DNA of 64,000 bases, taken from IMG/VR virus record IMGVR_UViG_3300023174_000036, positions 292,313-356,312 of that record; one strand, given 5' to 3'. The notes under the pieces were generated by a model. That model saw only the letters and a list, made by a program, of their open reading frames with translations. It ran no database searches and was not told where the DNA came from. Each line of letters begins with the position of its first letter. Within the stretch, counting starts at the first letter, position 1. The position numbers and the translations under genes were made by a program. Shown here piece after piece: positions 1,156 through 16,990 of the stretch.

Positions 1156-1440
1156 TCAGATATTCTCTAAATTCTGAATATTTGACCATTTTTTTAGTTT
1201 TTCAATCTTAGCTTCTTGGGCACGTTCAATGTTAGTATAGCTAACAATATCCATGCTTTGTAAGATATCAATCATGGCCAGCATATCGCCCAATTCTTCT
1301 TCAAGATGTTCTCTGTTAGTTTTGGGCTTTCCTGGTTTGAAATTATCTAGTCCAAAGCGGCTGATTTTACTTACCGCTTGTATAACTTCAGCACATTCTT
1401 CTTGGAGAATATCCATTACTTCTTTAGTTTGACTGTCCAT
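1156..1440 (-). CDS. MazG-like NTP pyrophosphohydrolase
   Basis: EECAEV...EEELGDML motif. Confidence 0.8.
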   Translation of the reverse strand: MDSQTKEVMDILQEECAEVIQAVSKISRFGLDNFKPGKPKTNREHLEEELGDMLAMIDILQSMDIVSYTNIERAQEAKIEKLKKWSNIQNLENI

Positions 1441-1443
1441 ATA

Positions 1444-2028
1444 TTACCTTTGATTTGCAAATGGTGCGATATAATCGCCTGCACTGGTTGTGCTAGTGCG
1501 TAGTGTATTGTAGACATTTTGAATACCCACTGCTTGATTCCAAGCATCTTCCAATGCATGGTGGGCAGTAACTGGTGGGCGTTGTGGGTTGATACCTAAA
1601 TCAAATGCTGTACGCACATCACGCACTTCCCAAAATTTCCAAGGAATAGCACGATTAATTTTGCGGTAAACATGCTCGCAAATGATGATATCAAAGCAAC
1701 TGCCATTTGCCCAAACACGTTTAGCACCCCAACAGAATTTATACAAGCGAGCAAATGCTTCTTCTATATCAAGTCTGTCAGTAGGATCAAAAGCCGCATC
1801 CTGGGCTTCTTTGCTTTGGCTAGCCCACCAAGCAATAGTATCATCGTTAGTGGTTAGTCCAATTCGGTCACAGCTATCTGTGTCTACCTTACAATAAAAA
1901 CTATCCATTTTTGGCTCTTGTAATTCTCTGCCGAACGGATCAAATTTTACTGCGCCGATTGTAAGTATGGTTGCATCTGGAGTAGTGTTAAGCGTCTCCA
2001 AATCAATCATAACGTCTGTATTTGCCAT
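1444..2028 (-). CDS. DEDDh 3'-5' exonuclease (ExoVIII/RNase T-like)
   Basis: MIDLETL, WANGSCFD, RDVRT, HHALEDA. Confidence 0.85.
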   Translation of the reverse strand: MANTDVMIDLETLNTTPDATILTIGAVKFDPFGRELQEPKMDSFYCKVDTDSCDRIGLTTNDDTIAWWASQSKEAQDAAFDPTDRLDIEEAFARLYKFCWGAKRVWANGSCFDIIICEHVYRKINRAIPWKFWEVRDVRTAFDLGINPQRPPVTAHHALEDAWNQAVGIQNVYNTLRTSTTSAGDYIAPFANQR

Positions 2029-2312: not shown

Positions 2313-2706
2313 CTGTGTCGTCCTCGTCTTGTTTGATTTTTTCAATAATCCAGTCTAAATTATAAATTCTATTTTTACTAATCAACTTATAAGGAATGGT
2401 ATCATCGTTAGTTATATAGTAAGAATTAGGATGAGCCAATAAAAATGTAATAAAGTGACTTGTGATTAAATCACAATTATCAACATCAATAATTATAACT
2501 TCAACTTGTTGTGCAATACTCAGTAACCAACCAATATCGTGATCGTCTTCGTCGTACACAAATACATTTACATCATCTAAAATCTGGCTTAAAATAATTT
2601 GAAACTGCTCTTTAACTTGAGTAGATGGTTTGATTAACAGATAGCTAAGGTTCATATTGAACAACTTATCCGGCGGTGTTATCAGGGTAATTTTTCCTAA
2701 GTTCAT
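2296..2706 (-). CDS. hypothetical protein
   Basis: 136-aa ORF overlapping neighbours in an operon-like arrangement. Confidence 0.7.
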
Positions 2707-3004
2707 ATATCCTTCTTGCGAAATATTCCAGTTTATCTTTTGGATAACTATTAAACCTTGGACCGTCTGTGTTAGTTTTCTCTAAGAAATCTGCCAATTC
2801 AGGTTCCGCGATATTATCTACTGCAACTTGTTCAAATGCACCTTGTGAATAATAAGTGTACAATTCGTCGATGGGTTTCATCTCGGGTCTTGCTATTATT
2901 CTATTCCAAATTGAGTTTGATTCTTGTTGTTCTTCGTTTTGTATGTAGCCTATTCTCGAGCCTTGATCTGTATCGTCCCTGTTTCGTCCTTGATCATGTA
3001 AGTC
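2666..3004 (-). CDS. probable -1 frameshift extension of the 2950-4200 protein (ORF track: 2666-2881)
   Basis: Frame is open from the A9G run at 3004-3013 to the stop at 2666. Confidence 0.6.
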   Translation of the reverse strand, partial: DLHDQGRNRDDTDQGSRIGYIQNEEQQESNSIWNRIIARPEMKPIDELYTYYSQGAFEQVAVDNIAEPELADFLEKTNTDGPRFNSYPKDKLEYFARRIYELRKNYPDNTAG

Positions 3005-4200
3005 TTTTTTTTTGACTCTTCTGATGCGGGCTCAATAACTTCTGTCAAATCAGGTTTGATTCTGTCACCTGTTACTTCTATGAAAGTATTGTCAGCAGTT
3101 ATTGTTTCAGGATGATAGCGTTTTGCCTCTTCTTGTTTTATAGCTTCATGTTCCAACTCGCGTTCAGCTTGTTCGATCATCTTGTTCCATTTTTCTAGCT
3201 CTGACTCTTCAGTGAATGGTACTGAAGGTTCCTCCGATGCTGTTATATCACCTCCTAGTGCAGTCAACGGTGTTTCGCTTGGAACTTCTGTGTGTGTGGG
3301 TTCTATGACAGTAGGTTCGATAACTATGCTATTTCCGCTCTCCGTAGTCAGGCTGTCATCCTCTGCTGATTCTTCTTTGGGAATATATTCTTGTGGTTGA
3401 GGTACAATGTCGTTAATACTTACAGGTACTGGTTCGACTTCTTCTTTCTTCCAACCAAAAGTCATCTGTGCGGCCAGCAACATGATAACTGCTAGCGGAT
3501 CAAACACAACAACAATAAGAACAATGATCCATGTTACTGCTTTTTCCAACATGTTTTCATCTGCGCCATGATCGCCGTAGATGAATTTAGCAATATATTT
3601 TATCGGACCAACTTCCGCTTCAACTTTTCGAACTTCGGCCGCAATTGGCGCACGTTCTTCGTTGAGTCCGGCGATTTTCTTTTGAGACTCTGCAATGTCT
3701 TGAGCGATGCGACTACGTTCTTTCTGCTGGGCTTTTCGAATGGCAACGGCTTTTTCTGCGCCCTTTTCATCCGAACTGCGACCCATAACTTGGTCCACCG
3801 ATTCATCAAGCTGTTTGAGCACTTTGCGATTAGCATCTATGTTTTCTTTTTCTGTTTTGATTTTTTCGTCGTATATGGCAATCTTACTTTGAACATCGCC
3901 GCTGACTAAATTTTGATCATTGTGTGCTTTACTTAGGAATCCAAAGATGCCCATCGATGTTATAATCATTAACACAATCACCGCAGTGATCATATAATAT
4001 TTTATAAAACGTGGAGCACGTTCCCAATTGGCTTTTAACCAAGAGGCACACACAAGTTTACCAACTTCCAAAGCTGAACCCATAATGATAATTGGAATTA
4101 CTGCCGCTGAAAATATTGCGGTAAGACCTACTACTGAGTAATAGATCGCTACCGCAGATATTGTTAAGCCAGTAAGAAGTAGTAACCAGGCTAAAATCAT
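2950..4200 (-). CDS. membrane protein with three N-terminal TM helices, a long coiled coil, a fourth TM helix and an acidic tail
   Basis: Hydrophobic segments and heptad-rich middle in the translation. Confidence 0.8.
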   Translation of the reverse strand: MILAWLLLLTGLTISAVAIYYSVVGLTAIFSAAVIPIIIMGSALEVGKLVCASWLKANWERAPRFIKYYMITAVIVLMIITSMGIFGFLSKAHNDQNLVSGDVQSKIAIYDEKIKTEKENIDANRKVLKQLDESVDQVMGRSSDEKGAEKAVAIRKAQQKERSRIAQDIAESQKKIAGLNEERAPIAAEVRKVEAEVGPIKYIAKFIYGDHGADENMLEKAVTWIIVLIVVVFDPLAVIMLLAAQMTFGWKKEEVEPVPVSINDIVPQPQEYIPKEESAEDDSLTTESGNSIVIEPTVIEPTHTEVPSETPLTALGGDITASEEPSVPFTEESELEKWNKMIEQAERELEHEAIKQEEAKRYHPETITADNTFIEVTGDRIKPDLTEVIEPASEESKKKTYMIKDETGTIQIKARE

Positions 4201-5161: not shown

Positions 5162-5692
5162 TTAATTATAAAAAATGTGACGGCCAATCTTGGCCACAGG
5201 TTGTTTGCCCCATTTTGGGTTAATATAATCGCCATGGAAATAAAGTGCATGTTTTATTGATGGCAATCTAAATCCTTCCAGCAATACTTTTTTGGCTACT
5301 TCCATACTTTCCGTGTACACCGGACCATTCATAGGCTTTTTAGCACTAGGGCCGTCACAATACCAACTGAATTGGCAAAGGACTTTTTCGTACACTACAT
5401 TCTTTTGATATACTACTTGGCAGATGTCCGACGGAAATTGTCCACTTTCTGCTCTATTGATTGTTACTTGAGCAACAGCTACTTTGCCTTCGAAAGACTC
5501 GTAACCTGCTTCATGGTATATGTTACGAGCAAGACAGTCTAGTTGTTTTTGTCTTAATTGTGCTGTAACTGGGCTCGCTTGTTCACGAGCTGATTTCAAG
5601 GTATCGAATTTATAATTAACTGCTCTATACCCTGCAAATACTACTAGCGATATTGCTAGTAAAAATACTACTGCTTTTATGATGCGTATCAT
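5162..5692 (-). CDS. SleB/Hydrolase_2 cell wall hydrolase with N-terminal anchor
   Basis: CLARNIYHEA..E...GKVAVAQVTINR, QFSW, ALYFH, KIGRHIFY. Confidence 0.9.
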   Translation of the reverse strand: MIRIIKAVVFLLAISLVVFAGYRAVNYKFDTLKSAREQASPVTAQLRQKQLDCLARNIYHEAGYESFEGKVAVAQVTINRAESGQFPSDICQVVYQKNVVYEKVLCQFSWYCDGPSAKKPMNGPVYTESMEVAKKVLLEGFRLPSIKHALYFHGDYINPKWGKQPVAKIGRHIFYN

Positions 5693-6319: not shown

Positions 6320-6646
6320 TTATACTCGAAATGATTCACCGCATCCACAACGATCTCGTTCGTTGGGATTGATGAAATCAAAACCTTCATTGAGTCCATT
6401 GCGAACCCAATCCATTGTCAAGCCATTTAGATAAGCTAGACTTTTGGCATCTATTAATACCACAAAGTCTTTTTGAGCAAAGTTGGTTACACCCACTTCG
6501 GCAGTGTACTCGTCCACGTATTCCATAGTGTAGGCCAATCCACTACAACCAGTGGTTCTTACACCTATACGAATACCAACACCCTTGCCGCGTTTGAGTA
6601 AATTTTGTTTTATTTTTTTAGACGCTGTGTCGGTTACGGTAATCAT
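6320..6646 (-). CDS. iscA: Fe-S cluster A-type carrier IscA
   Basis: GCSGLAY and CGCGESF motifs. Confidence 0.93.
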   Translation of the reverse strand: MITVTDTASKKIKQNLLKRGKGVGIRIGVRTTGCSGLAYTMEYVDEYTAEVGVTNFAQKDFVVLIDAKSLAYLNGLTMDWVRNGLNEGFDFINPNERDRCGCGESFRV

Positions 6647-7001
6647 TTACAGCCGCTTTGATAGCATCTTCTGCTAGAATAGAACAATGTATTTTAACTG
6701 GAGGCAATGCTAGTTCTTCTGCAATTTGACTGTTCTTGAGATTAATAGCATCATTGATGTGCATACCTTTGACCCACTCCGTAACCAAACTTGAACTGGC
6801 AATTGCTGAACCACAGCCGTATGTTTTGAATTTGGCATCAGTAATGATGCCATCTTCGTCTACTTTTATCTGTAGTTTCATTACATCGCCACATGCCGGA
6901 GCACCAACCATGCCAGTACCCACGGTGGGATCATCTTTTTCAAATGATCCCACATTGCGTGGATTTTCGTAGTGGTCGATTACTTTTTCTGAATATGCCA
7001 T
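6618..7001 (-). CDS. iscU: Fe-S cluster scaffold IscU
   Basis: MAYSEKVIDHYENPRNVG, GAPACGDVM, GCGSAIASSS, LPPVKIHCS. Confidence 0.96.
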   Translation of the reverse strand: MAYSEKVIDHYENPRNVGSFEKDDPTVGTGMVGAPACGDVMKLQIKVDEDGIITDAKFKTYGCGSAIASSSLVTEWVKGMHINDAINLKNSQIAEELALPPVKIHCSILAEDAIKAAVNDYRNRHSV

Positions 7002-7002
7002 A

Positions 7003-7314
7003 TTATTGTATACAGGTCCTAGTTCTAGTTATTGTGCCATCTGAGTGCTGGGTTTCCGTCCATACTGTACAGCTTGGTTGCGGAGTTACTGAATACACGG
7101 GTTGCGACTGTATGATAACTGGTTGTTGTACAACCACAGGAGGTTCATAGTAACGTGGACGATTTAACTCGTATCCAATTACTCCTCCAATAATCACAGG
7201 TGCAATCCAATTGTTATTATAGCCGCCGCGATAGTGTCCACCATGATGATGCCATTGTGCATTGGCCGTGCCTACCATTGCCAACATTGAGATTGCTAGT
7301 AATATCTGTTTCAT
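7003..7314 (-). CDS. secreted Gly/His/Pro-rich protein
   Basis: Signal peptide ending ANA; low-complexity body. Confidence 0.65.
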   Translation of the reverse strand: MKQILLAISMLAMVGTANAQWHHHGGHYRGGYNNNWIAPVIIGGVIGYELNRPRYYEPPVVVQQPVIIQSQPVYSVTPQPSCTVWTETQHSDGTITRTRTCIQ

Positions 7315-7362
7315 AATAGTCTCCAGGCTATACTAATATAACGCCTTAGGCGCTAGTTTCGT

Positions 7363-7482
7363 TTACTCTGCCTTCTTAAACATACCCATTACTTTTGCTT
7401 GAATATTTTTGGCAAAATTTGGCTGAGGAAAGTTCCAGCCGATAAAAGCACCCAGTGCTAACCAAAATAAAGTTTCTAACAT
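7363..7482 (-). CDS. 39-aa membrane peptide (not in ORF track)
   Basis: GGAGG SD; MLETLFWLALGAFIGWNFPQPNFAKNIQAKVMGMFKKAE. Confidence 0.7.
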   Translation of the reverse strand: MLETLFWLALGAFIGWNFPQPNFAKNIQAKVMGMFKKAE

Positions 7483-7520
7483 AATACACCTCCTAAAAAG
7501 AGCGTACTATATTTATCAAA

Positions 7521-7724
7521 TTATTTTGCAACTTTTGCTTCAGATCTTGCGTTCTTAACTGCGGTAACATCGTTACGAGTTTCTTTGCACAACTTGGCCA
7601 AATCTTGACAATGTTTACGTACACGGGTGCCGGCAGCGCCAACTTCCTTGTCATAAAACTTTTCGAAGTCTGCTTCCATTGCTTCTACGATCTTTGTAAA
7701 TTCTGCGTGTTTGTTTGTAGCCAT
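7521..7724 (-). CDS. histone H1-like Hc1 family protein
   Basis: DFEKFYDKEVGAAGTRVRKHCQDLAKLCKETR matches the Hc1 N-terminal domain pattern. Confidence 0.75.
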   Translation of the reverse strand: MATNKHAEFTKIVEAMEADFEKFYDKEVGAAGTRVRKHCQDLAKLCKETRNDVTAVKNARSEAKVAK

Positions 7725-7795
7725 TTTTAATAATCCTTTATATGAAGTACAGAGTACTTATACCTAGTGTACAAGGGTTAAAAATAAATGTCTAG

Positions 7796-8101
7796 TTAAT
7801 TGGCAATAACGTTTGGAGAACCGGCAGTAATGGCACCGGCATCGGTAGAATCGCCCACCCGAGCAACACCAATACCGCCAACAAACACATTACCCGAACC
7901 AGCATTGATAGCCGCGCCATGTGGTACACAATTCCTTCCACTTTTGATTGTGTGAGCGGCTGTGGGGTTACCAATGCATTCAACAGCAATACCATTTGCA
8001 AACACTTTGGCGCCAGCGCCAGTAGGACCAGTCACAGTTGTTGTACCGTCACAACCGTGACCTGTGGTAGTTGGATCTCCGTCTCTGGCTATTGCTGGCA
8101 T
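7796..8101 (-). CDS. PAAR-repeat baseplate spike tip protein
   Basis: MPAIARDGD..TGHGC, GSGNVFVGGIGVARVGD, GSPNV. Confidence 0.9.
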   Translation of the reverse strand: MPAIARDGDPTTTGHGCDGTTTVTGPTGAGAKVFANGIAVECIGNPTAAHTIKSGRNCVPHGAAINAGSGNVFVGGIGVARVGDSTDAGAITAGSPNVIAN

Positions 8102-8109
8102 AATACTAT

Positions 8110-8400
8110 TTATTTTAAAGCAATGCCGGTAGTATTTTGAATATACTGATCCGAAGCATCTTTAGCAGTTGGTGCTAGCACCATAATAGTTGAACGCGAA
8201 ATACTAACATTAGTATCCATTTCAACTGTAAACAAAAATGGCACAAGTGCAATACCTTTTTGACCTGCTGTTAACACCAATGGCTTATTCACTGTAACTG
8301 ACATTGGATTCTCGTCAACTAATTTAGCAACGATTTCTTCGCCTGCTGTTGTTTTGATTGTTACTACTTCGCCCGTTGCGATACCTTTATTGATTAGCAT
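8110..8400 (-). CDS. conserved phage protein (Sm-like fold suspected)
   Basis: TIKTTAGEEIVAK...YIQNTTGI. Confidence 0.55.
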   Translation of the reverse strand: MLINKGIATGEVVTIKTTAGEEIVAKLVDENPMSVTVNKPLVLTAGQKGIALVPFLFTVEMDTNVSISRSTIMVLAPTAKDASDQYIQNTTGIALK

Positions 8401-8402
8401 GT

Positions 8403-8645
8403 TTACCCTTTGAGTGTGTTAAAAAATTCTTCGTCTTTACCTGCAAGGCCTTGAAAGCCGCCAGGAAGGAGAACGCCATCCTTGAAAATTTGTGGAACAC
8501 TACGCAGTCCCTGATCCATCAAGAACTCACGTGCAGTTGGTTCATCTTCCATTTTAATAACTGTGAACGGAACATCTTTACTTTCTAATAATGCTTTGGC
8601 TCTGTCACAAAACGGACAGTTGTTTTTTGAATATACTGTGATCAT
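8403..8645 (-). CDS. glutaredoxin
   Basis: CPFC, RSVPQIF, GGF; adjacent to nrdB. Confidence 0.93.
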   Translation of the reverse strand: MITVYSKNNCPFCDRAKALLESKDVPFTVIKMEDEPTAREFLMDQGLRSVPQIFKDGVLLPGGFQGLAGKDEEFFNTLKG

Positions 8646-8654
8646 TGTTTTCTC

Positions 8655-9755
8655 TTATAATTCTGGTAATGCATCATACTCTAATGTCTCGCTCATTACA
8701 CCTAGTACGTAGTTAGTACTTTCGTTTTCTTGTAATGCAGTTTGTTTCTTGCTGGTATCACTGTGTTTGTTGAACCAAGGAATTGGTGTTGACTTTGGAG
8801 CACTTGATTGATATTTGATCCCAATTTGTTTAAGCGCATCAACTGCTGTGTAGTCCACAAAGTCACGAAGGATGTTTGCATTGAGTCCAATGACTGGCCC
8901 CATCTTGAACAGATAACTGGCCCAATCTTTTTCTTCACGAATCACATCCATGTACAGTGCGTAGACTTCTGCTTCACATTCTGTTTTGGCTTCAACAAAG
9001 CGTGGATCTTCTTTGACTACTTGATTGATCAAATACGCAGTCCAACCTTTGTGCAACAGTTCGTCTTGCAAGATCAAACTGATAATATTACCATTGCCAA
9101 TAAAGATTTTATTCTCAACCATGGCCAAACTAGTGGCAAACGATGTCATAAATCGAAACGCTTCCAAAGCATAGCTGGCATGCAATGCCATCCAAATGGC
9201 TCGAATATGTTCTTTCTCTGTGACTTCCATACCAAGTTCTTTACGACAATTAATTTGATGTAATGCATCGTAGTAATTACCCACACTACTAGCCATGTCA
9301 ATAATTTCTTTAGTGTCGTGGATTGTGTTGAACACATCCTTAGGCACGTTGTAAATGTTACGGATAATATGACTATAACTTTTGCTGTGAATATTGGTTT
9401 CAAAAAATCCCCAGTTGTACATCAATGCCTCAACTTCAGGCAAGCTACACACTGGTGTGAACACTTGTGTTGGCCCACGGCCTTGCAAACTATCCAACGC
9501 TGTTTGACGTAACAAGTTGCTGGTAAAAATATGTTTCACAGCATCACTTGCTTCTTTGAAGTCGTTTGAATCTTTGGTAAGACTTACTTCTTCCGGTTGC
9601 CAAAAGAAGCCACGTGCAGTAGCATCAAAGTCTGCAATCTTTTTGTATTTGACTTCTTCAAAGCGTTGGATAGTCACCGGACCTGCTGGATCCAGAAACA
9701 TCTTACGGCTTAGGTAGTCTGTTTTTGTTGTTAAGTTATATTGTGCGGTGCTCAT
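8655..9755 (-). CDS. nrdB: class Ia ribonucleotide reductase beta subunit
   Basis: FFWQPEEV, QTALDSLQGR, IHSKSY, LEAFRF, QDELLH, ALQENESTNY; start at the TAATG overlap, 9755. Confidence 0.95.
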   Translation of the reverse strand: MSTAQYNLTTKTDYLSRKMFLDPAGPVTIQRFEEVKYKKIADFDATARGFFWQPEEVSLTKDSNDFKEASDAVKHIFTSNLLRQTALDSLQGRGPTQVFTPVCSLPEVEALMYNWGFFETNIHSKSYSHIIRNIYNVPKDVFNTIHDTKEIIDMASSVGNYYDALHQINCRKELGMEVTEKEHIRAIWMALHASYALEAFRFMTSFATSLAMVENKIFIGNGNIISLILQDELLHKGWTAYLINQVVKEDPRFVEAKTECEAEVYALYMDVIREEKDWASYLFKMGPVIGLNANILRDFVDYTAVDALKQIGIKYQSSAPKSTPIPWFNKHSDTSKKQTALQENESTNYVLGVMSETLEYDALPEL

Positions 9756-10411
9756 TAATATTTTCCTGATGCAAGTACTATCTTGCAAATATGTTCTAAT
9801 CTTTCTATGTGCTCATATGCACGCCAAGGACTAGTGTCAATAGCAACAACTCCGTGTCCTTTGATGCCTACAATGTCATAGGCAATGTTTCCCATCTTGT
9901 CTAATTGTAACATCTTATGACACTGATCCGCAAGCTCTTGACTGATAGGAGGTACATCTCCCACATTGGGTGCAACCTTGGTATAACGATTCAATTCTGG
10001 AAACGCATCGCTAATAGTGCTGAGATCGATACCGGCATGCATTGCGGCAATACAGTAAGTAGGATGAACATGTACTACTACTCGAACTTCTCCACTGTGC
10101 TGGCCCATTTCTTTTTGTAAGCCAAAATGTAATGGAATCTCACCGCTGGGTACTAGATTTTTACTGATATCGGTATACGGCAAATCTCTCCAACTATAAC
10201 CAAAGATGCCTGTGCCGTTGCCACTATTGATAGTTCTATCAATTGCAATTTTTTTGAACTGATCAGGTTGTAGAGTTTGTTTACGTACACCGCTTGGTGT
10301 AATGTAAAAGTGATCACGGTCGTGATGACGAATACTCACGTTACCATCACGACTGGTAATCCAGTTACGCTTGTAAGCGTCTACCATTATGTCACATATT
10401 GTTTCTAACAT
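9755..10411 (-). CDS. class II aldolase/adducin family protein
   Basis: DGNVS, ITPSG, PSGEIPLH, VVHVHP, GHGVVA. Confidence 0.88.
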   Translation of the reverse strand: MLETICDIMVDAYKRNWITSRDGNVSIRHHDRDHFYITPSGVRKQTLQPDQFKKIAIDRTINSGNGTGIFGYSWRDLPYTDISKNLVPSGEIPLHFGLQKEMGQHSGEVRVVVHVHPTYCIAAMHAGIDLSTISDAFPELNRYTKVAPNVGDVPPISQELADQCHKMLQLDKMGNIAYDIVGIKGHGVVAIDTSPWRAYEHIERLEHICKIVLASGKY

Positions 10412-15644: not shown

Positions 15645-15997
15645 TTATTTGCCTAATTTGGTTGCACGTTTTGCCATTTTCTCAACTTCGCCGGTTTTTT
15701 CTCCGCCTTGTTGTTGTCTGTTTTGTTGATTATTGGTTTTTAACACAATGCCTTGACCATCAAATCGATCAATGAACTTTTTCAGTAATGGGCCTTCTTG
15801 TGGATCATCCCAACGGGCAACAAATGCATCATATGCTTCAGCATCACTGTCACCCAGTGTGGGCATGTCTCTATTGGCCAATTCAGTGTTTAATGTATCC
15901 CATCGAAGATTGCCTTCGATTCCGTTAGGGCCTTGATTGTTTGCGTCTGATTGAAGAACCCAAAGAATACGTTCTAAGGGTTCTATGTTCTCAATTA
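15645..15997 (-). CDS. probable -1 frameshift extension of the 15995-16990 protein (ORF track: 15645-15881)
   Basis: Open frame from the A10 run (15998-16007) with no canonical start codon until 15881. Confidence 0.65.
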
Positions 15998-16990
15998 TTT
16001 TTTTTTTGAAGCTAACAACATGCCCAACTTGCGGCTATAGTCAATGCTTTCACGCTTCTCACGACCCACTTCAGGTGCTGGAGGAGTTTCTTCTGCTGGT
16101 GCGGCGCCTGACATGTCAGCGGCCATGCCTGCCATTGCATCACCTCCCATGGAAGGCAATCCGCCTGTTGGTGCAGGTGCGCCCATTGTTGGTGCTTCAC
16201 CGCCTGATACTAAAGATAAGCCTGTTGATAGACCGGTTCTTGAAGTTTCTAATGCTGTGTATACTGCCTCTAATGCAGGTTTAACTGCATCTTGATATTG
16301 TTGTGCAACATCACTTCCTTGAGTTTCTCTTATAGAGTCCATTAGTTCAAGCAATTGTTCTGCTTTCATTGCGGCCACATCTTCTAGCCAGCCTGTAATA
16401 CGGTCTACCATGTCTTTTGTAGCCATGATGATTTCGGCCTTGTCTTCTTCGCCTTCAGCAAGAATATAACTTGCTTGTGATTCTGTTAAGTCGTAACGAA
16501 TTGATAATTCTGCTTTGAGTTCTGCGTTGTCGCTTTCGCCCAATGTCATTCGTTGAATTGCACTGTTGATCCAATTTGATGGAACTGAAAACCCTTTAGC
16601 ACGTTGTCCAATAATGGTTGCTTTGTATTGGTTAACACTTTCATTTTTCTTTTGTTTTTTCATTGTTTCTTCTTCGTCTTGTGATTCATCAAGATCGCAC
16701 TCACATGGCGCTTTGTGGCAATCACTGCATTTGCCTTCTTCGCGTTCCATGATTTCTTGATTGATAACATCAAGCAAAGCACGAGTCTTTTGATAAGCTG
16801 GACTTCCACTCAATGAGTCAAAACTTTCATTCATTTCGAGTTGGCTCATTTCAGTGCGTAGTTTGTTTTGCACGTCTGAAAGCTGAACATCGTTGAATTG
16901 TTCCAGTTTCAATTTGTATCCAAAGTTCTTAGCTAGACTTTCGTTGAGTCTTTTGCTAGTAACAGGTTTTGATAGTTCTCTAATTTGCAT
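15995..16990 (-). CDS. probable head-internal/scaffold-like protein
   Basis: Helical and acidic, many L/M-x-E sites, MQIREL N-terminus, late promoter. Confidence 0.6.
   Translation of the reverse strand: MQIRELSKPVTSKRLNESLAKNFGYKLKLEQFNDVQLSDVQNKLRTEMSQLEMNESFDSLSGSPAYQKTRALLDVINQEIMEREEGKCSDCHKAPCECDLDESQDEEETMKKQKKNESVNQYKATIIGQRAKGFSVPSNWINSAIQRMTLGESDNAELKAELSIRYDLTESQASYILAEGEEDKAEIIMATKDMVDRITGWLEDVAAMKAEQLLELMDSIRETQGSDVAQQYQDAVKPALEAVYTALETSRTGLSTGLSLVSGGEAPTMGAPAPTGGLPSMGGDAMAGMAADMSGAAPAEETPPAPEVGREKRESIDYSRKLGMLLASKKK

What the first reader, a model, noticed from the sequence alone, without database searches (positions are those of the whole stretch)
2666..4200. Programmed -1 frameshift candidate (A AAA AAG) extending a membrane coiled-coil protein
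Seen on the minus strand: ...GAA GAG TCA AAA AAA AAG ACT... (A9G at 3013-3004). The zero frame stops 18 codons later. The -1 frame stays open (KKDLHDQGRNRDDTDQGSRIGYIQNEEQQESNSIWNRIIARPE-MKPIDEL...) and runs directly into ORF 2666-2881, which has no clear SD. Established: A AAA AAG is the highly shift-prone dnaX/IS heptamer, and A9 runs can also cause transcriptional slippage. Inference: two isoforms (416 aa and about 510 aa) of a protein that is not a classic tail-assembly chaperone.
Basis: partly seen in the sequence, partly recalled or inferred. Interest (0 to 1): 0.68.

Follow-up and report, generated by a model that had tools for sequence, protein, structure and literature searches.

The report
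Conserved A9 slippage site, phage membrane protein
A run of nine A's near the end of a jumbo-phage membrane-protein gene is frozen in about 80 related phages and is the only way to reach a conserved downstream domain, so the gene almost certainly makes a short and a long protein by programmed slippage, and a second gene in the same window does the same.

Summary
On the minus strand a 416-aa ORF (4200..2950) carries TCA AAA AAA AAG at 3015..3004. The -1 frame is open from there to 2669.

Related phage contigs gave 82 distinct copies of this site. In 80 the long ORF sits in frame 0 and a conserved extension of about 110 aa sits in frame -1, both starting at the A-run. The run is A9 in 74, A8 in 4, A10 in 3 and A11 in 1.

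No copy has a start codon between the run and the conserved motif that begins at the zero-frame stop. In 18 of 76 copies with a full-length extension frame there is no start codon anywhere downstream of that motif. Synonymous positions at the site are frozen, while other invariant Lys and Ser codons in the same genes vary freely.

This is therefore a genuine, conserved recoding site giving 416-aa and 511-aa isoforms. It is not an assembly error.

I lean towards RNA-polymerase slippage over ribosomal -1 frameshifting:
- the ninth A is conserved at a wobble position outside the heptamer;
- there is no conserved stimulatory RNA structure or SD-like element;
- the phage encodes tRNA-Lys(CUU);
- A10 in-frame variants keep both tails.

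A second gene (16990..15995) uses the same TC-A9-G cassette. The protein's function is unknown.

The parts
2950..4200 (-). Zero-frame ORF, 416 aa (short isoform), stop TAG at 2952..2950
   Evidence: 47 full-length homologues aligned.
3451..4200 (-). Residues 1-250: highly conserved membrane module, made of predicted transmembrane helices plus a long antiparallel coiled-coil hairpin
   Evidence: Many invariant columns. AF2 helices 2-57, 59-141, 145-213 and 215-248, with pLDDT above 90 at residues 110-180. Weak Tetraspanin and DUF4407 hits, both below cut-off. This part is also conserved in Pelagibacter phage Mosig and several jumbo phages.
3016..3450 (-). Residues 251-395: acidic, indel-rich, hypervariable linker, predicted disordered except for one helix at 334-361
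3004..3015 (-). Slip cassette TCA AAA AAA AAG (A9 at 3013..3005). It contains the heptamer A_AAA_AAG in zero-frame phase.
   Evidence: Run length is 9 in 74 of 82 unique sites. The Lys codons are AAA 47/47, AAA 47/47 and AAG 46/47, and the Ser codon is TCA 42/47, whereas other invariant Lys and Ser columns mix codons.
2953..3003 (-). Dual-coding overlap. It encodes the zero-frame tail of the short isoform (17 aa, conserved pattern T-Y-M-x-K-D..G-x-I-Q-I-K) and, in the -1 frame, a variable linker.
   Evidence: The substitution pattern is synonymous in the zero frame. AF2 gives a weak beta-hairpin at 401-413.
2669..3004 (-). -1 frame extension, 112 codons from GAC at 3004 (stop 2668..2666). It is specific to the 511-aa long isoform.
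   Evidence: 45-98% identity over its whole length in related loci.
2927..2950 (-). Conserved motif G-Y-[IV]-Q-N-x-E-Q in the -1 frame, starting at the zero-frame stop and upstream of any start codon
   Evidence: Y, Q, N, E and Q are invariant in 56 sequences. 0 of 82 sites have ATG, GTG or TTG between the run and the motif.
2690..2914 (-). Small helical domain of the extension (residues 32-106 of the 113-aa segment)
   Evidence: AF2 on alignment A1, pLDDT 72-83. No known fold was matched.
2666..2881 (-). The ATG-ORF that a gene caller would annotate (71 aa). It is the distal part of the extension, not an independent gene.
   Evidence: Its ATG is not conserved: L, I, F, A, S or H occupy that column in homologues. 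A relative is annotated as a 65-aa stand-alone protein.
15645..16990 (-). Second recoding locus with the same cassette. A 331-aa ORF (16990..15995) ends TCA AAA AAA AAA TAA (A10 at 16007..15998). The -1 frame continues for 120 codons, 16007..15648.
   Evidence: All 61 unique homologous loci end TC/CC + A9 + G/A/C + TAA, followed by a conserved -1 extension.

Best explanation
The gene is expressed as two proteins that share residues 1-399. The short form (416 aa) ends in a conserved 17-aa tail. The long form (511 aa) continues in the -1 frame with a conserved motif and a small helical domain. The switch happens at the frozen TCA9G cassette. I think the main mechanism is transcriptional slippage. 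The RNA polymerase, probably the host's because this is a T4-type phage with no polymerase of its own detected, occasionally adds one extra A while copying the nine-T template run, and the A10 transcripts read straight into the extension. Ribosomal -1 slippage on A_AAA_AAG may contribute, and it would give the identical protein.

Shown: the site, its conservation, the lack of any alternative start, and the dual coding. Inferred: that slippage occurs, that it occurs at the RNA level, and the isoform ratio. The probability that a trans-frame long isoform is made by either mechanism is about 0.9. The confidence given here is for transcription being the main level.
For: Recoding in general:
- The frame 0 / frame -1 arrangement occurs in 80 of 82 distinct sites at 60-85% protein identity.
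- The extension is conserved from its first residue.
- No site has a start codon before the motif, and 18 of 76 have none after it.
- Synonymous sites at the cassette are frozen, against mixed codons at 8 other invariant Lys columns and 10 conserved Ser columns.
- Rare in-frame natural fusions exist (L058/L060/L145, L298, L299, L020).

Transcription level specifically:
- The first A of the run is the wobble base of the preceding codon, outside the heptamer. It stays A even when that residue changes (TCA 70, CTA 4, CCA 4). The wobble base one codon further upstream varies freely.
- There is no conserved downstream RNA structure: the alifold consensus is empty and mean z is -0.1.
- An SD-like element upstream is present in only 8 of 63.
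- The phage carries tRNA-Lys(CUU) next to tRNA-Lys(UUU). By established knowledge of E. coli dnaX, this should damp AAG-specific ribosomal slippage.
- At the second site the base after A9 varies (G 49, A 8, C 4) while A9 is constant.
- The A10 in-frame variants keep the short tail open in the other frame, which a -1 ribosomal shift could not reach.
- Nine is the run length at which slippage becomes significant in many bacteria, and it is the length used by Thermus dnaX (PMC1088944).
Against: At both window sites the run is phased so that A_AAA_AAG is a perfect zero-frame heptamer, and G follows the run in most copies; both features are what ribosomal frameshifting would select. Four lineages have only A8 (TCT AAA AAA AAG), which keeps the heptamer but weakens a polymerase slip site. 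The host, and so its tRNA set and polymerase, is unknown. A very divergent phage RNA polymerase could have escaped the Pfam search.
Confidence: 0.52

Rival explanations
1. Classical programmed -1 ribosomal frameshifting. Two tRNA-Lys slip from AAA-AAG to AAA-AAA on the heptamer A_AAA_AAG, as in E. coli dnaX and many IS elements, and transcription is faithful.
For: The heptamer is in the correct phase at this site and at the second site. G after the run is kept in 79 of 82 sites here and 49 of 61 at site 2. The four A8 lineages retain the heptamer. At site 2 a zero-frame stop directly follows the heptamer in 61 of 61 loci. The -1 frame opens only 2-27 codons upstream of the site, as is typical of frameshift cassettes.
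Against: There is no conserved 3' structure or 5' SD-like stimulator. Two A's outside the heptamer are conserved, one of them a wobble base. The phage encodes tRNA-Lys(CUU). The AAC and AAA variants at site 2 change the A-site codon but not the A9 run. A10 in-frame variants retain the short tail in the +1 direction.
Confidence: 0.33
2. DNA-level phase variation. Replication slippage changes the run between A9 and A10 in the phage population, so individual genomes encode either the short or the long protein.
For: In-frame A10 genomes exist in several metagenomes (L058/L060/L145, L298, L299). Homopolymers are known to be mutable (PMC1088944).
Against: The consensus is A9 in 74 of 82 distinct sites, and in 74 of 74 metagenome contigs matching one flank set. 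Only 4 long in-frame proteins were found among 5.8 billion clusters. A switch that flipped often should give a mixed picture among assemblies.
Confidence: 0.06
3. No recoding. The downstream ORF is a separate small gene, translated from its own start or by reinitiation after the upstream stop, and the Lys run is conserved only as protein.
For: In the window an ATG at 2881 gives a 71-aa ORF. A relative is annotated as a 65-aa protein.
Against: That ATG is not conserved. The invariant motif lies upstream of it, and no start codon precedes the motif in any of 82 sites. 18 of 76 sites have no ATG, GTG or TTG anywhere after it. The Lys and Ser codons are frozen at synonymous positions. No SD is visible.
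Confidence: 0.04
4. Assembly or sequencing error in a homopolymer, or a recently broken gene.
For: Homopolymers are error-prone. One extra A would fuse the frames.
Against: The same A9 and the same frame break are seen in dozens of independent assemblies of diverged phages. The zero-frame tail after the break is itself conserved under purifying selection.
Confidence: 0.02

Closest known systems
Thermus thermophilus dnaX (tau/gamma by transcriptional slippage at A9)
   Same: A run of nine A's in the sense strand late in the gene, two products sharing an N-terminal part, and no RNA stimulator needed (PMC1088944).
   Different: There the templated frame gives the long protein and slippage gives shorter ones. 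Here the templated frame gives the short protein and slippage adds a domain. The protein family is unrelated, and this is a phage gene.
E. coli dnaX and IS-element A_AAA_AAG -1 ribosomal frameshift cassettes
   Same: The identical heptamer in the same phase, with a -1 frame outcome.
   Different: dnaX has an upstream SD-like element and a downstream hairpin. Neither is conserved here. Here the conserved run extends two A's beyond the heptamer.
Citrobacter rodentium tssM and Shigella spa13/mxiE (transcriptional frameshifting in secretion-system genes)
   Same: A poly-A tract yields two length variants of a protein, and in tssM it is an inner-membrane protein whose C-terminal domain is added by slippage (PMC4256274 abstract; PMC5009743).
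   Different: Those are bacterial chromosomal or plasmid genes in a few strains. Here the cassette is conserved across a broad phage clade and is used in at least two genes.
Phage lambda G/GT tail assembly chaperone frameshift
   Same: A phage gene pair in which a minority product carries a C-terminal extension from the -1 frame, conserved across many phages (PMC5009743).
   Different: A different slippery sequence and protein, and a different genomic place (not between the tail tube and tape-measure genes). This protein is membrane-embedded.
Pelagibacter phage Mosig hypothetical protein Mosig_00157 and jumbo-phage homologues (XacN1, RsoM2USA, SCTP-2, CM1)
   Same: The N-terminal 250-aa membrane/coiled-coil module, 24-46% identical.
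   Different: In Mosig, the only one checked at the junction, there is no A-run, no frame break and no homologue of the extension domain. In the other phages only the N-terminal 55-70% of the protein aligns.

Membership tests
Programmed -1 ribosomal frameshift cassette (dnaX / IS type) | Slippery heptamer X_XXY_YYZ in zero-frame phase | tested here: met
   A_AAA_AAG sits within TCA AAA AAA AAG. It is kept in 78 of 82 sites, with A_AAA_AAA in a few.
Programmed -1 ribosomal frameshift cassette (dnaX / IS type) | -1 ORF that opens near the site, lacks its own start and is conserved as protein | tested here: met
Programmed -1 ribosomal frameshift cassette (dnaX / IS type) | Conserved downstream hairpin or pseudoknot stimulator | tested here: not met
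   The RNAalifold consensus of 61 sequences has no pairs. Mean z of single folds is -0.1.
Programmed -1 ribosomal frameshift cassette (dnaX / IS type) | Upstream SD-like stimulator | tested here: not met
   GGAG, GAGG or AGGA lies within 22 nt upstream in only 8 of 63 sequences.
Programmed -1 ribosomal frameshift cassette (dnaX / IS type) | AAG read only by tRNA-Lys(UUU), the basis of the heptamer's high shiftiness in E. coli | tested here: inconclusive
   The phage encodes both tRNA-Lys(UUU) and tRNA-Lys(CUU). The host's tRNA set is unknown.
Programmed transcriptional slippage (Thermus dnaX, IS630 of Roseiflexus, Shigella spa13, Citrobacter tssM) | Homopolymeric A or T run of about nine in the coding strand at the frame junction | tested here: met
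   A9 at 3013..3005. Runs of 9 or more in 78 of 82 sites.
Programmed transcriptional slippage (Thermus dnaX, IS630 of Roseiflexus, Shigella spa13, Citrobacter tssM) | Run length conserved at the nucleotide level beyond what the protein or a heptamer requires | tested here: met
   The wobble A of the preceding Ser, Leu or Pro codon is kept in all 78 sites with a run of 9 or more. Site 2 shows the same behaviour.
Programmed transcriptional slippage (Thermus dnaX, IS630 of Roseiflexus, Shigella spa13, Citrobacter tssM) | Heterogeneous run length in mRNA but not in DNA | not testable with these tools
Phage tail assembly chaperone G/GT pair | Small soluble chaperone gene pair located between the tail tube and tape-measure genes | tested here: not met
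   The neighbours are an exonuclease, an NTP pyrophosphohydrolase, an endolysin-like gene, NifU and RNR. The product is a 416-aa membrane protein.
Pfam DUF4407 / Tetraspanin | Score above the family's gathering threshold | tested here: not met
   Tetraspanin scores 21.7-23.2 bits against 32.1. DUF4407 scores 16-18.4 bits against 31.3. The architecture resembles these families, but membership is not shown.

The most novel reading that the evidence does not exclude
A clade of uncultured T4-type jumbo phages uses one fixed cassette (TC-A9-G) as a general expression device. RNA-polymerase slippage at this cassette sets the ratio of short and C-terminally extended proteins in at least two unrelated genes: a membrane protein and a virion-structural-like protein. 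A third gene may receive a programmed truncation. The ratios might respond to polymerase speed or NTP pools during infection. Programmed transcriptional slippage as a repeated, clade-wide strategy in dsDNA phages has not, to my knowledge, been described, and my paper searches found no such report.
Probability: 0.4. Interest if true: 0.78.

Novelty: new member of a known kind. Interest (0 to 1): 0.62.

Why it matters
Recoding in tailed phages is known almost only from tail chaperones and a few capsid genes. Here it is firmly conserved in a membrane protein, and in a second gene of the same genome, in abundant uncultured lake phages.

Gene callers split both loci. They report a truncated protein plus a small orphan ORF, or no ORF at all where the extension lacks a start codon. 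Hundreds of database entries are therefore mis-annotated and a conserved domain is hidden.

The pair of sites also offers a clean natural system for separating polymerase slippage from ribosomal slippage, because the same 12-mer occurs with natural A8, A10, A9C and in-frame variants.

Tried and rejected
No other route was tried.
- RNA stimulators: no downstream structure and no SD-like element.
- Function by sequence: Pfam, PHROGs and NCBIfam gave nothing above cut-off for either part.
- Function by fold, extension model: nothing in Foldseek PDB. BFVD returned only its own family, annotated as a 65-aa ORF. The best VIA-wide Z was 5.7, which is noise for helical bundles.
- Function by fold, 416-aa model: only generic coiled-coil hairpins, E of 0.03 or worse. 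The Atlas returned only viral hypothetical proteins.
- A role in lysis or peptidoglycan hydrolase control, suggested by the endolysin-like gene two genes upstream and the glucosaminidase neighbour in Mosig. I keep this only as a weak lead, because the neighbourhoods in XacN1, RsoM2USA and the immuto phage are not consistent with it.
- Alignment A2, mixing the in-frame L058 protein with fragments, was misaligned and was not used for folding.
- Mosig's downstream 65-aa ORF is not related to the extension.
- Paper searches found no report of this site.
- No complex prediction was run, since I claim no binding partner.

Full report
**What is there**

The window is the last 64 kb of a 356,312-bp IMG/VR virus record, CheckV 96% complete. 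The genome has a T4-type major capsid gene, 29 tRNA genes and 39.9% G+C.

On the minus strand an ORF runs from ATG 4200 to TAG 2952..2950 and encodes 416 aa. Near its end it reads GAA GAG TCA AAA AAA AAG ACT, with nine A's at 3013..3005 followed by G at 3004. The zero frame ends 17 sense codons later. The -1 frame is open from the run down to 2669 and contains the 71-aa ATG-ORF 2881..2666. The long product would be 399 + 112 = 511 aa.

**Is it real or an error?**

Searches of viral contigs with the 416-aa protein, with the -1 frame peptide and with an alignment of the latter gave 204 loci and 82 distinct copies of the site.

- In 80 copies the long upstream ORF and the downstream conserved peptide are in frames 0 and -1. 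The peptide match starts at the A-run itself.
- The run is A9 in 74, A8 in 4 (TCT AAA AAA AAG), A10 in 3 and A11 in 1.
- A pattern scan of metagenome contigs that allowed A8 to A11 between fixed flanks returned 74 contigs in 62 distinct contexts, and all had A9.
- These phages differ by 15-40% in protein sequence. Just upstream of the run lies a hypervariable, indel-rich linker.

An assembly error or a fresh pseudogene is therefore excluded.

**Is the downstream frame translated through the site?**

- The -1 peptide is conserved along its whole length. A motif G-Y-[IV]-Q-N-x-E-Q has five invariant residues in 56 sequences and begins exactly where the zero frame stops.
- No site has ATG, GTG or TTG between the run and this motif. 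18 of 76 have no such codon anywhere downstream of it.
- The window's ATG at 2881 is not conserved.
- The -1 frame is closed 2-27 codons upstream of the run.

The only conserved way to translate this domain is to enter the -1 frame at the run.

Natural in-frame fusions exist but are rare:
- L058/L060/L145, L298 and L299 have A10 followed by G.
- L020 has a 2-nt insertion.
- Only four long proteins with this C-terminal domain were found among 5.8 billion protein clusters.

**Selection at the nucleotide level**

This test used the 47 aligned full-length genes.

- Eight other invariant Lys columns mix AAA and AAG, with AAG in 4-26 of 47.
- The three Lys codons of the cassette are AAA 47/47, AAA 47/47 and AAG 46/47.
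- The Ser codon before them is TCA in 42 of 47, whereas ten other conserved Ser columns use three to six codons each.
- Where that residue has changed, the codon is CTA or CCA, so its wobble A is retained in all 78 sites with a run of nine or more.
- The wobble base one codon further upstream is free to vary: T 12, G 8, A 30, C 13.

**Both frames matter in the overlap**

The zero-frame tail of 16-19 aa follows the conserved pattern K-[TS]-Y-M-x-K-D..G-x-I-Q-[IV]-K. Its substitutions are synonymous in that frame. The short isoform is therefore a selected product too, not just a by-product.

**Which mechanism?**

Either mechanism yields the same protein.

*For RNA-polymerase slippage*
- Nine A's are conserved, rather than the seven bases of the heptamer, including a wobble base outside it.
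- There is no conserved downstream structure and no upstream SD-like element.
- The phage encodes tRNA-Lys(CUU) beside tRNA-Lys(UUU). From what is established for E. coli dnaX, this should reduce AAG-dependent ribosomal slippage. This is my knowledge, not tested here.
- The A10 in-frame variants keep the short tail open in the other frame, which a -1 ribosomal shift cannot reach.
- Nine is the length at which selection against slippage appears in many bacterial genomes, and it is the length used by Thermus dnaX (PMC1088944).

*For ribosomal -1 frameshifting*
- The run is phased as a perfect A_AAA_AAG heptamer.
- G follows the run in nearly all copies.
- The four A8 lineages keep the heptamer.

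I put transcription-level slippage at about 0.5, ribosomal frameshifting at about 0.33, and the two together at about 0.9. No RNAP beta-like or T7-like polymerase was found (the control for the latter was blank). By analogy with T4, the host polymerase would therefore be the slipping enzyme. This is an inference.

**A second site, and perhaps a third**

The whole genome has only four runs of nine or more A or T. The chance expectation at this base composition is about ten by my own estimate.

*Site 2.* One run lies in the window at 16007..15998 on the minus strand.
- A 331-aa acidic protein (weak PHROG hit 'virion structural protein') ends TCA AAA AAA AAA TAA.
- The -1 frame continues for 120 codons.
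- All 61 distinct homologous loci, at 56-100% identity, end in TC or CC + A9 + G (49), A (8) or C (4) + TAA.
- This is followed by a conserved -1 extension of 101-122 codons.
- The clade therefore uses the same cassette in two unrelated genes.

*Possible site 3.* A further A9 lies at genome 163015..163023, inside a 546-aa ORF and in another phase. It is conserved in the three homologues found, at 52-69% identity. That sample is too small to judge.

A scan of all runs of eight or more shows that only the two window sites combine an ending ORF with a long open alternative frame.

**What the protein is**

- Residues 1-250 are very strongly conserved. AF2 models them as membrane helices plus a long antiparallel coiled-coil hairpin, pLDDT above 90 at residues 110-180.
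- Pfam gives only sub-threshold Tetraspanin and DUF4407 hits.
- By the positive-inside rule, applied by eye, the hairpin would face the periplasm and the C-terminal part the cytoplasm. This is an inference.
- Residues 251-395 are acidic, disordered and hypervariable.
- The two isoforms differ only at the far C-terminus. One has a 17-aa tail modelled weakly as a beta-hairpin. The other has the motif plus a helical domain of about 75 aa, pLDDT 72-83, with no recognisable fold.
- The N-terminal module occurs in Pelagibacter phage Mosig and several jumbo phages. Mosig, the one I examined, has no slip site and no extension.
- Some lineages (L025, L036, L061, L079, L020) have an extension of only about 40 codons, which keeps the motif but lacks the helical domain.

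Function is unknown. My working model is a membrane-anchored scaffold whose cytoplasmic end exists in two versions at a ratio fixed by slippage, analogous in logic to tssM, dnaX or G/GT. A link to cell-wall hydrolases is only a weak lead.

**Comparison with the known, and novelty**

Mechanistically this is a known kind of event. Its closest relatives are Thermus dnaX (A9, transcriptional), E. coli dnaX and IS elements (A_AAA_AAG, ribosomal) and Citrobacter tssM (a poly-A tract giving two lengths of a membrane protein; PMC4256274).

It fails two features of the classical ribosomal cassette, the stimulators. It meets the testable features of a transcriptional slip site. It is not a tail-chaperone pair.

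I found no report of it in five paper searches and a reading of the PRFect paper. I rate it a new member of a known kind. What is unusual is that one cassette is reused in two genes across a large clade of uncultured phages.

**Limits**

The host is unknown. The counts are of distinct sequences, not independent lineages. The third site rests on three homologues.

Noticed in passing
window 15645-16990 (minus strand); A10 at 15998-16007: Second conserved slippage locus. A 331-aa acidic, virion-structural-like protein ends TCA AAA AAA AAA TAA, and the -1 frame continues for 120 codons. All 61 distinct homologous loci have TC/CC + A9 + G/A/C + TAA followed by a conserved -1 extension.
   Followed up: yes
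outside the window: L290:2016-2024 (genome 163015-163023, minus strand): A third A9 lies in frame inside a 546-aa ORF (..Y Q K K T..). It is conserved in the three homologues found, at 52-69% identity. Slippage here would truncate the protein after 5-7 codons, so this may be a programmed short form. The sample is too small to judge.
   Followed up: partly
outside the window: genome 264184-276020 and 1530-1689: 29 tRNA genes, including adjacent tRNA-Lys(UUU) and tRNA-Lys(CUU) at 274482-274636. This bears on how shifty AAG can be during infection.
   Followed up: partly
L058:4104-4113 (also L060, L145), L298:1437-1446, L299:1431-1440, L020:4232-4241: Rare relatives in which the long form is encoded in frame. 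Three have A10 + G and one has a 2-nt insertion after the run. All that were read keep the short tail open in the other frame. Whether these are true variants or homopolymer miscalls is unknown.
   Followed up: partly
L025, L036, L061, L079 (about 120 nt after the A-run); L020: Lineages whose -1 extension is only 39-42 codons. They keep the G-Y-V-Q-N-x-E-Q..L-W motif but lack the helical domain.
   Followed up: no
whole genome: There are only four A or T runs of nine or more in 356 kb, against about ten expected from base composition by my estimate. The three in clear coding context are all conserved in homologues. This suggests long runs are purged unless they are used.
   Followed up: partly
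window 5162-5692 (minus strand): A 176-aa protein with endolysin-family PHROG hits and a weak Rz-like spanin hit lies two genes upstream of the membrane protein. In Pelagibacter phage Mosig the homologue's direct neighbour is annotated as a glucosaminidase. The synteny is not consistent in other phages.
   Followed up: partly
window 1156-2028 and 6618-9788 (minus strand): The neighbourhood holds an exonuclease, an NTP pyrophosphohydrolase, a NifU-like Fe-S protein and the ribonucleotide reductase small subunit. This looks like an early or metabolic gene block rather than a structural module.
   Followed up: no
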